A DNA stretch of 64,000 nt from Macrostomum lignano (Eukaryota). How positions within the stretch are numbered: position 1 is the first letter of the stretch; every line of letters starts with the position of its first letter. A program made the position numbers and the translations under genes. The stretch lies in NCBI GenBank assembly GCA_002269645.1, contig NIVC01001518.1, positions 1 to 64,000 on the forward strand, read 5' to 3'. The notes below the pieces were generated by a model, which saw only the letters and a list, made by a program, of their open reading frames with translations, did not search any database and was not told the DNA's origin. Shown piece by piece: positions 17,826-63,091 of this stretch.

Positions 17826-20800
17826 TTAAGGACCAAACTGGACGAGACCAGTGCTACAAGGCGGCTATAAAGCCTTTAATTATCAGGCGTATGTGGAATC
17901 GTGTGAAAATTTTCGCTGCGAATATTTTTGATTCAAATGAACGAAATGATTGTTACAAGGAGGCAGCAAGTTGTGCCGCTGGATATCACCAATGGGAATG
18001 GGCTTTCAATTTTGCTGGAAAAGTCACCGACACGTGTCTGAGAGATCAATGTTATGCAGAGGCAGCCAAAACTGCAGTGCTTGCTGGACATTTTGACGAA
18101 GGGAAACGCCTTATTCAGCAAGTTACGGACACAAGCACGAAAGAAAAGTACTATATGGAGGCTGTAACATTAGCATCCCACAAGAGTAAATGGGATGCTG
18201 TGAAATTTCTGATTAATTCGGTTGCTACTGAAGACAACATAGATAATTTGTGTCACGCTGCTGTTGAATTTGCAACGAGGAATAAGCAGTGGGAATTTTT
18301 GACATTTCTGCTGGACAAAATAGCTGAACAAGCCACAAAAGATCAGTGCTGCATCGAAGCTACAAAGCTTGCCGTGAGCAAGCAGGAGTCTCAAAAAGTT
18401 TTAGAAATCGCGGAGAAATTTGCTGGTCAATTTGCCTTGGATCAGTGCTACATAGCAGCAGCGAAAACCCTTGTACTTGGCAACCGTTTTAAAAAATTGA
18501 CTGATTTGCTATCTCGAATCAGCGATAAAAAAGAACATGATAGTTTCTGCTTTCAGGAAGCAGAAAAAGTAATGAGACGTCGGAATCGTTCCAAAGTGAC
18601 AAGTTTATTAATTGGTAGAATTACTGACAATCATATGAAAAGGGAGTGTCGCATCAATGCAGTTTACTGTTTTGCATCAAAGGGAAATATGAAACTAGTC
18701 GAAGATCACTTGTCGAAATTTCCTACCGACCAAAAAAAGCAGTGCTACAAGATGGCTGCAAAATGCGCTGCAAACAATTGTCACCGGAAAGCGGCAAAAT
18801 TTTTCATGCAGAAAGTCAAAGATAAACATTTAAACTACGAGTGCTGCACTGAGGTGGGAAGATCTGCGGCAGCTAAGGGCCAGCTTGAAGAAATAAAATT
18901 TCTGTGTGATTGGATACAAAGTCAAACAAATGACGTTCAAAAACTTTTTGAGTTTCATAAAATTTGTGCAGTCGAGGCTTGCAATCATTTTAAAGAAAAC
19001 ATTCTTGAGTTTATTGGTCTCAAACCTGACTGGCTCTTCCAATCCAGCACCATCCTCAGCTTCACTGTAGCGATGGCCATCGAAGGCAGAAACTCTGTTC
19101 TCACCGACACCCTCTCTCGAATGCAGCCAGCTCGCATCACACAGCTGCTCCGTCTCTCCATCTCACAAAGACACGTCGCTCTTGCTGTCACACTGATCAA
19201 TGATGAGCGAGTCAGCACAGAGCATGTCGATCTGCCAGACAGCACTGGAGCCACTGCTCTCATGCTGGCAGCTGATGCAGGTCATCACGAACTCATTGAG
19301 AAACTCATCGATCTCGGTGCGTCAGTGCGTGCTGAAGACAGTCAGGGTCGGACTGCTCTGTCACGAGCGTGCGAAGCCGGTCACGTGCGAGCAGCCAAGG
19401 CTCTGATGGACAGAGGAGCGGATGCATGTCATCGAGACGGTCGGGGTCTGTCGTGTGCGCAGGTGGCACAGCTATTCGAGCAGCGGCAGGTGCTGCGGCT
19501 GCTGGATCGCAGTGGAGCGGGGTGAGTGAGGCAATAATTTCATCCATTTTAGAATAAATGGCATAAATGCGTGAAGTTCAAAACACTTCAGCCGTTAATT
19601 TTTATGTAAAACTTAGATAAAGCGTCTCCGATACACCAAATGTTTTTTTTATTCACGAATTGCAGAAGCCCAGAGGCCCGGCAGGCAGTCGCTCATCGCT
19701 TGGATTGGGGCCTCCATCGGTGAGTCTGACCGGTTCGGCTTTTGCTGCCGCATTGCTCCTTCTAACAGGCTGGCAGCTTGGGGCAGAAATTGCGGCGAAA
19801 CTTAGCAAGGTTGAGATTGGGTTGGACTGAGCGCTGCAGCAGCTGCGCTCTCAACTCTCCTGCTTTTTCTGTCCGAGCAAATCACCCACACGCATCTCGG
19901 ATCATTCCAGGTTCTCAGACGACTCTCAGCAAGACAGGTTCCTGAGCGAGGAGCTGCATCGACTGCTCAGCAATGCGAGATTCACCGAGGAGAGAGCAGA
20001 GTGTCAGCAGAACCTGGCTGACTGGCTGCAAGGAGTCGCTGGAGTTCTCACACAGGATGGCAATCGCAGGCAGATGACGGGCAGCTACGCAGAAGGCTGG
20101 GCCAACAGTCTGGTGCAAGTGAACGGCAGGACAGCTGCAGACTCGGACAATGACTGGACTGTGCTGGTTGCTGGGCAAGAGTTCCATCTGGAAGGTGGCT
20201 GCAAAGGAAAATATGGTTCCTGCAGAGACGACGCCACTCGGCTGCAGGTCACGAAGGGCCACGCACTGGTGGCAGTGGGAGCAGGTCAGTGAGGCTGGGT
20301 TCATTCTCATAATGCTTGTTGTGGTGCGAGTACTAAGTACGAGGTATAGGGTATTGAGTACTTTAATCGTATCGTATTTACGCTCGTATGTTTCAATGTA
20401 TTCCATTCTCGATCAACTCAAACCATTACGAAGCATTTAGTTCAAGGATATAAAAATAAAGCAGCAGTCAGTCGAGACTCCACAATTCTCAAATCTCATT
20501 CGCATAAACAACCCAAGCGTTCAATACACAATATTACTGAGATCGGAATGCAACTGGAAGCCCATTTTAACAGTAGAAAGACCACGCTATTTTCCCCATG
20601 GGGAAAGACCACGGGGGTGTATTACAAATACACACGACCCATTTTACGATATTTCGCAAACTATGTAAAAGTCCACCATATATATATAAATTTTTCGCCC
20701 TTTCCGACGAACTAACTTTCAAAGTCATCCGACGTCAGGATCGTCGAGATATTCAACGATTCTTGTCGAAGACACTGGTGGCAAGGACAACCAACACTAC

Positions 20801-62900: not shown

Positions 62901-63091
62901 GCGCCGGCTTTAATTAGATGCCAAACTATAGTCACGTGACCATACTTCGTCGCCCACTGGAGAGCTGTTTTGCCCGACTCATCAGCGCAATCGATGCCGC
63001 AGCGCTGATTACGAAGTATCTGACATGTGTCTTTCAAGTTGCCTCTTTTAACGGCTTCGATCAGAGACTGGTTTTCATTTGTTTTCATCAT
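56980..63091 (-). CDS. Gene D: ankyrin repeats - cGLR nucleotidyltransferase (divergent paralog); exons 63091-62723, 62254-61777, [bridging exon not identified], 59756-59399 (-1 frameshift at ~59570), 58379-56980
   Basis: ANK 'GKTALQWA', 'GWTPLHEAA', 'GQTPLHLAA', 'GFSPLHLAA'. NTase 'VGSYAEGW|GNSL..DPDADIDLTV', third Asp 'AVDIVRARKCCSYP', plus 'LLRVSTSFLE', 'LKTYHAKTLIF', 'CMMHFFL'. The NTase exon has the same phase-2 acceptor and phase-1 donor as genes A and B. The ANK-to-NTase link is inferred (a phase 1 to 2 exon is needed). Confidence 0.68.
58505..58990. repeat. 21-bp minisatellite (GCGCTAAAATGAGTGCCTGCG) with a tail ending CTGGCTACGCCTCTG (59081), in a gene D intron
   Basis: Same family as 27200-28490. 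Confidence 0.93.
59917..60827. repeat. ~910-bp (TATC)n microsatellite
   Basis: Direct. Confidence 0.98.
61385..61695. repeat. 15-bp minisatellite (GGCGCCAGCACCAGG)
   Basis: Direct. Confidence 0.92.
62295..62640. repeat. 31-bp minisatellite (TTTTGAACAACCTGCAATCCAAGCGACTGGA) in a gene D intron
   Basis: Direct; lies between the exon boundaries at 62254 and 62723. Confidence 0.92.

What the first reader, a model, noticed from the sequence alone, without database searches (positions are those of the whole stretch)
17826..63091. Modular ankyrin / cGAS-like NTase / MAP3K-like kinase gene array: candidate undescribed innate-immune signalling system
Seen: four genes built from three modules in different combinations. 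A = repeats-ANK-cGLR (catalytic residues intact); B = repeats-ANK-cGLR(substituted)-kinase; C = ANK-kinase; D = ANK-cGLR (intact). A FReD gene and relic fragments sit among them. Established: Mab-21/cGAS-like receptors make nucleotide second messengers in animal innate immunity. In the OAS-RNase L pathway, the NTase product binds the ANK domain of an ANK-(pseudo)kinase effector. FReDs are invertebrate pattern-recognition proteins. Inference: A and D may be signal-making sensors and B and C kinase effectors, forming a clustered signal-synthesis-to-kinase circuit that would not need STING. I do not know of a described cGLR-kinase fusion family but cannot confirm novelty.
Basis: partly seen in the sequence, partly recalled or inferred. 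Interest (0 to 1): 0.92.

Follow-up and report, generated by a model that had tools for sequence, protein, structure and literature searches.

The report
Flatworm cGAS-like gene fused to kinase
This stretch of the flatworm Macrostomum lignano genome holds three ankyrin/cGAS-like genes, of a kind already catalogued, and one ankyrin-kinase gene; one of the cGAS-like genes is joined in frame to a protein kinase, which appears undescribed, but nothing found here shows that the genes form a signalling circuit.

Summary
The window is Macrostomum lignano.

- Gene A is CC-repeats + ANK + cGAS-like NTase. B is the same, fused in frame to a Ser/Thr kinase inside a single 585-codon ORF. C is ANK + kinase. 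D is ANK + cGAS-like NTase on the minus strand. A FReD gene lies between B and C.
- A keeps GS/DxD/D. B has DxG and D->S.
- As assembled, C and D each carry a frameshift.
The kinase is joined directly to it.
- 'MAP3K-like' is loose: the nearest solved structures are WNK, SLK, MAP2K5 and ASK1, and the catalytic loop reads HRDINCSN.

The ANK-cGLR family is a large expansion seen here only in M. lignano. It is already catalogued: Li et al. 2023 cloned a paralogue about 85% identical to A. The kinase fusion was found only here and in one UniProt model. None of 32 family representatives has a kinase domain, and none of nine paralogous loci has a kinase neighbour. A and B diverge almost neutrally (dN/dS 0.9).

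Best reading: B arose when a cGLR gene was joined to a neighbouring ANK-kinase gene. Its dead NTase domain could at most regulate the kinase in cis. The proposed nucleotide-to-ANK-kinase circuit has no support.

The parts
17723..23326 (+). Gene A: CC-rich ANK-like repeats + ANK + cGAS-like NTase/Mab21 + family C-terminal domain (CTD). Exons 17723(start unresolved)-19521, 19666-19719, 19911-20284, 21759-23326.
   Evidence: The spliced model is open with GT..AG junctions. Pfam finds Ank_2 at 2e-20 and Mab-21_C at 2.3e-5. Motifs are GS, DSDND and AQD. A structure model with pTM 0.80 matches MAB21L1 and cGAS.
31913..36422 (+). Gene B: repeats + ANK + cGAS-like NTase (DSDIG, AQS: two catalytic Asp lost) + CTD + Ser/Thr kinase. 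Exons 31913-32775, 32922-32975, 33267-33643, 34077-35839, 35922-36422.
   Evidence: The model is open for 1185 codons. Mab-21_C and Pkinase lie in one ORF, 34091-35848. DNA homology to A (90-93%, exons and introns alike) stops at 35471.
35471..35490 (+). Fusion junction inside exon 4 of B: ...GWVREKLKKLD | PPFLKTWEKVQFLGRGGFGEV.
   Evidence: The cGLR tail matches the tail of paralogue L001 (QKLKRLD...). The kinase side matches C from 2-3 codons inside C's first kinase exon (PEG|PPLLERW).
44190..44806 (+). Fibrinogen-related domain (FReD) gene. The main exon is ORF 44324-44806, and a probable short upstream exon lies around 44190-44340.
   Evidence: Fibrinogen_C scores 1.6e-28 over profile positions 76-190 of 221. 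The upstream ORF reads [18 protein letters not shown].... The join of the two exons is inferred.
47035..49711 (+). Gene C: atypical ANK repeats + Ser/Thr kinase. Segments 47035-47598 | frameshift at 47599-47600 | 47601-48175, 48776-49139, 49217-49711.
   Evidence: Pfam finds Ank_4 and Pkinase (4.1e-32). The frameshift lies in a G-run. The splice ...TAASAG|PEGPP agrees with UniProt model P0035. A 212-bp tandem duplication spans 47451-47959.
51813..51920 (-). Short relic of a family kinase (C-lobe fragment).
   Evidence: tblastn with the B kinase, aa 208-243, 47% identity, E 1e-7.
56980..63091 (-). Gene D: ANK + divergent cGAS-like NTase + CTD. ANK exon 63091-62723, NTase exon ~59755-59399 with one base missing between 59568 and 59567, last exon ~58367-56980.
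   Evidence: Pfam finds Ank_2 at 4.5e-20 and Mab-21_C at 1.7e-7. GS, DADID and AVD are present. The reading frame opens to the stop only if one base is restored. The join of the ANK and NTase exons is unresolved.

Best explanation
WHAT IT IS
This is a local cluster from two gene-family expansions seen here only in Macrostomum lignano. The first family is ANK-repeat cGAS-like receptors (cGLR/Mab21) that carry a family-specific C-terminal domain (CTD). A and B are recent tandem duplicates of it, and D is a distant member on the other strand. The second family is ANK-Ser/Thr kinases, represented by C.

SHOWN
- The domain content and the splice-consistent open models of A and B.
- The in-frame junction of cGLR tail and kinase inside one exon of B.
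- Loss of two of the three catalytic carboxylates in B.
- Frameshifts in C and D as assembled.

INFERRED
- B is a chimera. A genomic deletion or recombination joined the end of the last exon of an A-like cGLR (after ...KLKKLD) to the first kinase exon of a downstream C-like gene. This removed the cGLR stop codon, the spacer and the kinase gene's ANK exons.
- A is a candidate nucleotide-signal synthase like other cGLRs, as is D if its frameshift is an assembly error. Their repeat/ANK N-termini would recognise a ligand or a partner.
- B cannot make such a signal. If it is functional, its Mab21+CTD module acts as a regulatory or binding module that controls the attached kinase in cis. This resembles shrimp Mab21 proteins, which activate IKK-epsilon by direct binding without making a cyclic dinucleotide.
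- The co-location of A, B, C and D reflects the history of this one locus, not a conserved circuit.
For: - Identity: M. lignano; Pfam; fold matches MAB21L1, cGAS and Sp-cGLR1, E about 1e-5, target-normalised TM-score about 0.5; the C-lobe motifs RVSFSxxEK / YHAKT / HFF align to human cGAS.
- Family already classed as cGLR: Li et al. 2023, Table S3 rows 89-93, including PAA68676.1 = BOX15_Mlig016402g1 = P0007.
- Restricted to M. lignano and large: 30 clusters at 90% identity and at least 32 at 50% identity. All 10 that I checked are M. lignano.
- Chimera: A and B are 90-93% identical in DNA across both exons and introns, and the homology ends exactly at GWVR. B's tail matches the normal family tail. 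The kinase side begins 2-3 codons inside the first kinase exon of C, and B and C share the same intron position in the kinase.
- B's kinase is at most about 64% identical to any other family kinase. That fits a neighbouring donor gene that was consumed in the fusion.
- Catalytic loss in B.
- Kinase motifs GxGxxG, AAK, HRD, DFG and APE are present in B and C.
- Not a conserved circuit.
- Precedent for a Mab21-kinase link without a nucleotide signal: PMC12928593.
Against: - There is no expression evidence for any of the four genes, nor for B's read-through junction.
- The A-B dN/dS of 0.90 (branch estimates about 0.8-1.0 with L001 as outgroup) fits a chimera drifting towards a pseudogene as well as it fits diversifying selection.
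- The kinase family has Asn where Ser/Thr kinases have the catalytic-loop Lys (HRDINCSN). Activity is therefore not assured.
- None of the M. lignano cGLRs cloned by Li et al. is named among their 15 active enzymes. NTase activity of this family is therefore unproven.
- The UniProt model P0034 joins the CTD to the kinase C-lobe by a different route: it splices out the N-lobe. The true transcript structure is therefore open.
- The neighbourhood test covers only +-10 kb at nine loci.
Confidence: 0.6

Rival explanations
1. A and D sense a ligand and make a nucleotide second messenger. This binds the ANK domains of kinases B and C, as 2-5A binds RNase L, giving a clustered signalling pathway that does not need STING.
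For: - All three modules lie within 45 kb, and B physically links a cGLR to a kinase.
- A keeps the catalytic triad.
- Another family member is modelled as cGLR-CTD spliced to an ANK-caspase (P0203/L007). ANK-effector genes therefore sit directly downstream of cGLR genes at two or more loci.
Against: - None of nine other cGLR loci has a family kinase within 10 kb.
- None of 32 family representatives has Pkinase.
- C's ANK region shows only generic similarity to the other ANK regions compared.
- C has no KEN/RNase domain, and the kinase is no closer to RNase L than to generic STE/WNK kinases.
- C and D are frameshifted as assembled.
- B's ANK region is the cGLR-type ANK, not the kinase-type.
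- No NTase activity is known for this family.
Confidence: 0.1
2. A non-functional by-product. The cluster is debris from segmental duplication in a repeat-rich, partly polyploid genome. B is a young accidental fusion that is decaying, and C and D are pseudogenes.
For: - The A-B dN/dS is 0.90, with exons no better conserved than introns.
- B lost two catalytic Asp within dS of about 0.07.
- C and D carry frameshifts.
- A has I->N inside DxD, and a premature stop relative to P0190's tail.
- Minisatellite arrays fill the spacers.
- The fusion is essentially unique.
Against: - B keeps an uninterrupted 1185-codon frame across five exons with canonical splice sites and all the main kinase motifs.
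- A second copy of the junction, with A-like diagnostic residues, exists in an independent gene set (P0034). The fusion has therefore persisted through at least one duplication or allelic split.
- Both frameshifts are single-run indels of a type I know long-read assemblies to produce (my knowledge, not tested here).
- Older family comparisons show purifying selection (dN/dS 0.25-0.38).
Confidence: 0.27
3. An assembly artefact. The cGLR-kinase junction is a chimeric join made by the assembler in a region of paralogous repeats.
For: The region is rich in paralogues and tandem repeats. The window's A and B have no protein at 90% identity or above in the NCBI set.
Against: - The junction is in frame and sits within a few bases of a natural exon start. 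It continues the normal family tail.
- The independent UniProt model P0034 also joins the CTD to the very same kinase C-lobe, 100% identical over that exon.
Confidence: 0.03

Closest known systems
ANK- and TPR-fused cGAS-like receptors (cGLRs) of invertebrates (Li et al. 2023, PMC9980059)
   Same: - The architecture is N-terminal repeats followed by a Mab21/cGAS-like NTase.
- Five M. lignano members were cloned in that study, including P0007 (PAA68676.1), which is about 85% identical to A.
- GS/DxD/D motifs are conserved in most members.
   Different: - This family adds a C-terminal domain of about 230 aa with no match among solved structures.
- B adds a protein kinase, a partner not mentioned in that paper's text.
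[quoted passage not shown]
- No activity is reported for the M. lignano enzymes.
Shrimp LvMab21-1/2/3 activating IKK-epsilon (PMC12928593)
   Same: Mab21-family proteins that make no cyclic dinucleotide and act by direct protein contact with a kinase. This is the mode proposed here for B, whose NTase is catalytically dead.
   Different: In shrimp the Mab21 protein and the kinase are separate proteins, and the kinase is a TBK1/IKK-epsilon homologue. Here they form one polypeptide, and the kinase belongs to a family seen here only in M. lignano that sits nearest WNK, SLK, MAP2K5 and ASK1. No function has been tested here.
OAS - 2-5A - RNase L
   Same: An NTase-fold sensor together with an effector that has N-terminal ANK repeats followed by a kinase-fold domain. 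C has ANK + kinase.
   Different: - C has no KEN/RNase domain, and its kinase carries the main catalytic motifs rather than being a pseudokinase.
- It shows no specific similarity to RNase L.
- The NTase here is of the Mab21/cGAS type, not OAS.
- No ligand link is shown.
cGAS - STING - TBK1
   Same: A Mab21-fold sensor upstream of a Ser/Thr kinase.
   Different: In that pathway the kinase is recruited through STING after cGAMP binds. Here no STING is in the window, the kinase is unrelated to TBK1, and in B it is fused directly to a dead NTase.

Membership tests
Mab21 / cGAS-like receptor (cGLR) family | Match to the Mab-21 C-terminal (HhH/H2TH-like) domain model PF20266 above its gathering score | tested here: met
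   A scores 24.6-24.9 bits, B 31.7 and D 30.9-31.8, against a cut-off of 24.1. A is only just above the cut-off.
Mab21 / cGAS-like receptor (cGLR) family | Match to the Mab-21 NTase-core model (PF03281) | tested here: not met
   PF03281 does not hit the A or D NTase regions at E<=1. It is also absent from the precomputed Pfam lists of all paralogues. The core is too divergent for the HMM.
Mab21 / cGAS-like receptor (cGLR) family | Bilobed cGAS/Mab21 fold | tested here: met
   An AF2 model of A (pLDDT 76.9, pTM 0.80) was searched with Foldseek. Top hits are MAB21L1 (5eog), cGAS (4kb6 and others) and Sp-cGLR1 (8gjy), at E 1e-5 to 5e-4 and target-normalised TM-score about 0.5.
Mab21 / cGAS-like receptor (cGLR) family | Active site: GS loop, [DE]h[DE] and a third acidic residue | tested here: inconclusive
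   - A has G75-S76, D97-N-D99 and D160, all kept.
- B has D-I-G and S, so two are lost.
- D has GS, D-I-D and D, but the frame is broken between them.
- Assignment of the third Asp rests on strand position and on spacing from the RVSFS motif, not on a residue-level alignment to cGAS.
Mab21 / cGAS-like receptor (cGLR) family | Ligand-dependent synthesis of a nucleotide second messenger | not testable with these tools
   Li et al. cloned five M. lignano paralogues, but none is named among the 15 active enzymes.
Eukaryotic protein kinase (Pkinase PF00069) | HMM match plus the GxGxxG, VAIK-Lys, HRD, DFG and APE motifs | tested here: met
   The C-lobe ORF of C scores 4.1e-32 and the N-lobe of B 6.1e-9. 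Motifs were read. One deviation: the catalytic loop is HRDINCSN, with Asn where Ser/Thr kinases have Lys, in B, C and every other family member whose sequence I read.
MAP3K (STE11/MEKK/ASK-type) kinases | Closest relatives are MAP3Ks | tested here: inconclusive
   In a phmmer search of the PDB, one EGFR chain and then WNK1/3 are the best hits (about 1e-25), followed by SLK, MAP2K5 and ASK1/MAP3K5 (3e-23), then PLK2, STK10 and TNIK. Outside Macrostomum, identity falls to about 30% against assorted kinases. No specific MAP3K signal was found.
OAS/RNase L-type sensor-effector pair | Effector built as ANK repeats + pseudokinase + KEN ribonuclease | tested here: not met
   C ends 8 residues after the kinase domain, so it has no KEN domain. 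Its kinase motifs are catalytic-type. RNase L is not among the 47 solved-structure matches at E<=1e-20.
OAS/RNase L-type sensor-effector pair | The NTase product binds the effector's ANK repeats | not testable with these tools
   C's ANK region shows only generic repeat-level similarity to the other ANK regions compared.
Conserved gene cluster ('system') | The component families recur as neighbours at independent loci | tested here: not met
   Nine other cGLR loci (L001, L002, L004-L010; +-10 kb) show no family kinase. The kinase locus L003 shows no cGLR.
Fibrinogen-related domain proteins (FReD) | Match to Fibrinogen_C PF00147 | tested here: met
   ORF 44324-44806 scores 1.6e-28 over profile positions 76-190 of 221. 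The N-terminal part probably lies in a separate short exon.

The most novel reading that the evidence does not exclude
In Macrostomum the cGLR-like module (repeats/ANK + Mab21 fold + CTD) may have been repurposed as a general sensor/switch cassette wired in cis to effectors. The examples are a protein kinase in B, joined by exon fusion, and an ANK-caspase in PAA93319.1, joined by splicing from a donor that overlaps the cGLR stop codon. This would be an NLR-like 'sensor + effector in one chain' logic built on a cGAS fold. The free ANK-kinase and ANK-caspase families would be its trans-acting partners, and no STING would be needed.
Probability: 0.12. Interest if true: 0.8.

Novelty: new variant of a known kind. 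Interest (0 to 1): 0.45.

Why it matters
cGLRs are now seen as a major family of animal pattern-recognition receptors, but their known output is a diffusible nucleotide read by STING. A cGAS-fold domain joined directly to a protein kinase, and in a sister gene model to a caspase, would point to a second way of wiring this fold to effectors. That would fit the recent finding that shrimp Mab21 proteins activate IKK-epsilon by contact.

It would also be notable in a phylum reported to have mostly lost cGLRs. M. lignano is a transgenic, RNAi-amenable model, so the idea can be tested.

The value is limited. The fusion is essentially a single-locus event, its NTase is catalytically dead, it evolves almost neutrally and it has no expression evidence. 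The underlying ANK-cGLR family is already catalogued.

Tried and rejected
1. Profile searches with alignment A1, against the PDB and against the 1.84-billion-protein library, were swamped by the ANK columns. I recovered the 32 hits whose best stretch spans ANK through CTD and used only those.
It gives no residue-level mapping of the catalytic triad.
3. A search with the junction region found no protein spanning CTD to kinase N-lobe. P0151 and P0152 are CTD only.
4. In literature searches for cGLR + Macrostomum, cGLR + kinase domain, and Macrostomum + STING + cGAS, no listed title or abstract describes such a fusion or addresses M. lignano STING; I did not open these papers' full texts, apart from reading the abstract and outline of PMC12928593. 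Table S2 of Li et al. is truncated in the held copy before the letter P, so a kinase entry there cannot be excluded.
5. I tested for a shared 'receiver' ANK module between C, other ANK-kinases and the ANK-caspase. Only generic ANK similarity appeared.
6. A fold search of the CTD alone (model pLDDT 86.6) gave no significant PDB match. The best hit has E 0.37, and the hits are TPR-like helical proteins.
7. A full D model joining the ANK exon to the NTase exon could not be built with phase-compatible GT..AG sites. A small intervening exon may exist, as in A and B.
8. I rejected MAP3K as a specific label and RNase L as a homologue.
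Full report
ORGANISM AND GENE MODELS

The window is animal DNA with GT..AG introns and many minisatellites. Protein searches place it in the free-living flatworm Macrostomum lignano. 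The long ORF 34091-35848 matches about 30 M. lignano 'hypothetical protein BOX15_Mlig...' entries at 77-87% identity. Two UniProt models match window genes at or near 100% (P0034, P0035).

I mapped paralogues by tblastn and read the splice sites. This gave open, canonical models for two genes.
- A: exons 17723(ORF start)-19521, 19666-19719, 19911-20284 and 21759-23326, 1264 codons.
- B: exons 31913-32775, 32922-32975, 33267-33643, 34077-35839 and 35922-36422, 1185 codons.

Pfam confirms ANK in all four genes, Mab-21_C in A, B and D, Pkinase in B and C, and Fibrinogen_C in ORF 44324-44806.

THE FUSION IS REAL AND NEEDS NO SPLICING

One uninterrupted ORF (34091-35848) contains Mab-21_C at aa 92-161 and the kinase N-lobe at aa 473-584. 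The kinase C-lobe follows after an 82-bp intron. That intron sits at the same position as the intron in C's kinase.

A and B are 90-93% identical in DNA across exons and introns, and the homology stops at A 23129 / B 35471, the codons for GWVR. B then reads EKLKKLD. This is the normal family tail: QKLKRLD... in L001 and QKLERLD... in other members. B continues PPFLKTWEKVQFLGRGGFGEV, which aligns to C from 2-3 codons inside C's first kinase exon (PEG|PPLLERWDAVRLIGRGAFGEV).

The simplest history is a deletion or recombination that joined a cGLR gene to a downstream ANK-kinase gene and discarded that gene's ANK exons. This is an inference. B's kinase is at most about 64% identical to any other family kinase, which fits a donor gene that was consumed in the event.

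IS IT A cGLR?

Pfam detects only the C-terminal Mab21 domain, and for A only just above threshold. The NTase-core model does not hit. Other evidence supports the assignment:
- An AlphaFold model of A's NTase-to-C-terminus region (19-sequence alignment, pLDDT 76.9, pTM 0.80) has MAB21L1, many cGAS structures and coral Sp-cGLR1 as its best PDB matches, at E 1e-5 to 5e-4 and target-normalised TM-score about 0.5.
- Profile comparison with human cGAS aligns the hallmark C-lobe motifs: RVSFSFQEK to RLSFSHIEK, YHAKT to YHVKT, and MPHFF to ENYF.
- The family alignment shows a conserved GSYAEG loop. It shows DSDID at the start of the next strand and AQD at the start of a later strand. This is the expected NTase arrangement, although the third Asp is assigned by topology only.

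By these motifs A keeps all three acidic residues (DSDND, AQD). B has DSDIG and AQS. D has DADID and AVD.

The classification is not new. Li et al. 2023 list five M. lignano proteins among the cGLRs they cloned. One is PAA68676.1 = BOX15_Mlig016402g1, which is P0007 here and about 85% identical to A. [quoted passage not shown] None of the M. lignano enzymes is named among their 15 active ones.

1. As assembled, C has a +2/-1 frameshift in a G-run (47599-47600) inside a 212-bp tandem duplication of its ANK region.
2. D lacks one base between 59568 and 59567, between the GS and DxD motifs. It opens to its stop codon only if that base is restored. Both defects could be long-read indel errors or real pseudogenising changes. 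I cannot tell which.
3. After the Mab21 fold, A, B and D all carry a conserved domain of about 230 aa. It models confidently (pLDDT 86.6, pTM 0.86) but has no significant PDB match (best E 0.37). The kinase of B is attached to this domain.
4. 'MAP3K-like' is loose. The best solved relatives are one EGFR chain, then WNK1/3, SLK, MAP2K5 and ASK1, all at similar scores. Outside Macrostomum, identity drops to about 30%.
5. In B, C and every other family member whose sequence I read, the catalytic loop is HRDINCSN, with Asn where Ser/Thr kinases have Lys.

IS IT A SYSTEM?

The family is very large and, in my searches, found only in M. lignano.
- There are 30 clusters at 90% identity.
- Among the top 150 hits of an exhaustive profile search, 32 clusters at 50% identity span ANK through CTD.
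- All ten of these that I looked up are M. lignano.
- None of the 32 has a Pkinase domain. Two have a caspase domain, one has WSC, and that same one (P0192) also has a RING finger.

I fetched nine other cGLR loci with 10-kb flanks. None contains a family kinase. One has tandem cGLRs. The one kinase locus has tandem kinases and no cGLR.

A search across the junction found no protein joining CTD to kinase N-lobe. The only other link is P0034. This UniProt model joins an A-like CTD to B's kinase C-lobe (100% identical) but skips the N-lobe. It shows that the juxtaposition exists in an independent gene set, probably at another copy. It also leaves the transcript structure open.

C's ANK region shares only generic repeat similarity with the other ANK regions compared, and C has no KEN domain. 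The RNase L analogy therefore stays an analogy.

SELECTION

I computed Nei-Gojobori estimates on the last exon. Deep paralogue pairs give dN/dS 0.23-0.38. Recent pairs give 0.57-0.78. A against B gives 0.90 at dS 0.069. With L001 as outgroup, both branches come out near 0.8-1.0 (my arithmetic on the values).

This fits either relaxed constraint or diversifying selection. B's 1185-codon frame is nevertheless unbroken. That would be unlikely under complete neutrality for that amount of divergence; this is a rough estimate from my own reasoning, not a test.

MECHANISM

- Shown: the architecture, the junction, and the loss of catalytic residues in B.
- Inferred: A is a candidate signal synthase, as is D if it is intact.
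- Inferred: B cannot be a synthase. If it is functional, its Mab21+CTD module regulates the fused kinase in cis.
- Closest precedent: shrimp Mab21 proteins bind and activate IKK-epsilon without making a cyclic dinucleotide (PMC12928593).
- Main rival: B is a young, nearly neutral chimera in a decaying cluster.

A SIDE OBSERVATION THAT KEEPS THE BROADER IDEA ALIVE

In PAA93319.1 (P0203, locus L007) the cGLR-CTD exon ends ...RIE followed by TGA. This stop codon lies inside a consensus GTGAGT donor, and the annotated model splices from that donor to ANK-caspase exons 600 bp downstream. cGLR genes followed directly by ANK-effector genes, and sometimes joined to them, may therefore be a recurring theme in this genome. 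The effector is not always a kinase.

VERDICT

The genes and the fusion are real. The ANK-cGLR family is known. The kinase fusion is a new variant, found so far at essentially one locus and with a dead NTase. The proposed circuit is unsupported. Interest is moderate.

Noticed in passing
window 22600-23140 (A), 34900-35470 (B), 57000-57700 (D): A conserved C-terminal domain of about 230 aa follows the Mab21 fold in the whole family. It models confidently (pLDDT 86.6, pTM 0.86) as helices plus a small sheet. It has no significant PDB match (best E 0.37) and no Pfam hit.
   Followed up: partly
L007 14351-18304 (P0203 = PAA93319.1): A paralogue is annotated as cGLR-CTD + ANK + caspase. The CTD exon ends RIE-TGA, with the stop codon embedded in a GTGAGT donor, and the model splices from there to ANK-caspase exons. 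In all, 2 of 32 family representatives carry Peptidase_C14.
   Followed up: partly
P0192 (UniProt A0A1I8I4L5): Another family model carries a WSC domain at its N-terminus and a RING finger near its C-terminus. This could be a true fusion or a merged gene model. One family kinase (P0064) also lists a WSC domain.
   Followed up: no
window 35964-35990 (B), 49250-49280 (C): B, C and every other family kinase whose sequence I read have HRDINCSN (or HRDINCxN) in the catalytic loop. Asn replaces the Lys of HRDLKxxN, and there is no compensating Arg. Catalytic competence is therefore uncertain.
   Followed up: no
window 23129-23326: A's tail (RWRVSNRSG...VAMETAAEQRDSWTHAKLSRMRLQ*) looks like an internal duplication of the preceding VAMETQDEEKIGWVRQKL segment. 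Paralogue P0190 reads on through it to the normal KLERLD... tail, whereas A stops early.
   Followed up: partly
window 47451-47959: A 212-bp tandem duplication (2.4 copies, 90% identity) builds C's atypical ~70-aa double-ANK repeats. The frameshift lies in its first copy.
   Followed up: partly
window 25483-26863, 27209-28484, 30199-30889, 42547-43813, 50233-51661, 55046-56540, 58508-58992, 59919-60826: Large minisatellite and microsatellite arrays (periods 4-114 bp, up to 226 copies) fill the spacers and some introns between the genes. They also create long spurious ORFs on both strands.
   Followed up: no
window 247-2107 (-): Two exons encode a BAR domain (BAR_3 of the APPL family, 1.4e-7 and 2.5e-10). 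The gene, apparently of BAR-PH type, runs off the left end of the window and is unrelated to the cluster.
   Followed up: no
L003 9944-19280: The only NCBI-annotated family kinase locus holds tandem kinase copies. One of them aligns as a single intron-less block (18324-19280).
   Followed up: no
window 16669-17459: A 151-bp tandem repeat (5.2 copies) lies immediately upstream of A's first long exon. A's true start codon and any 5' exon remain undefined.
   Followed up: no
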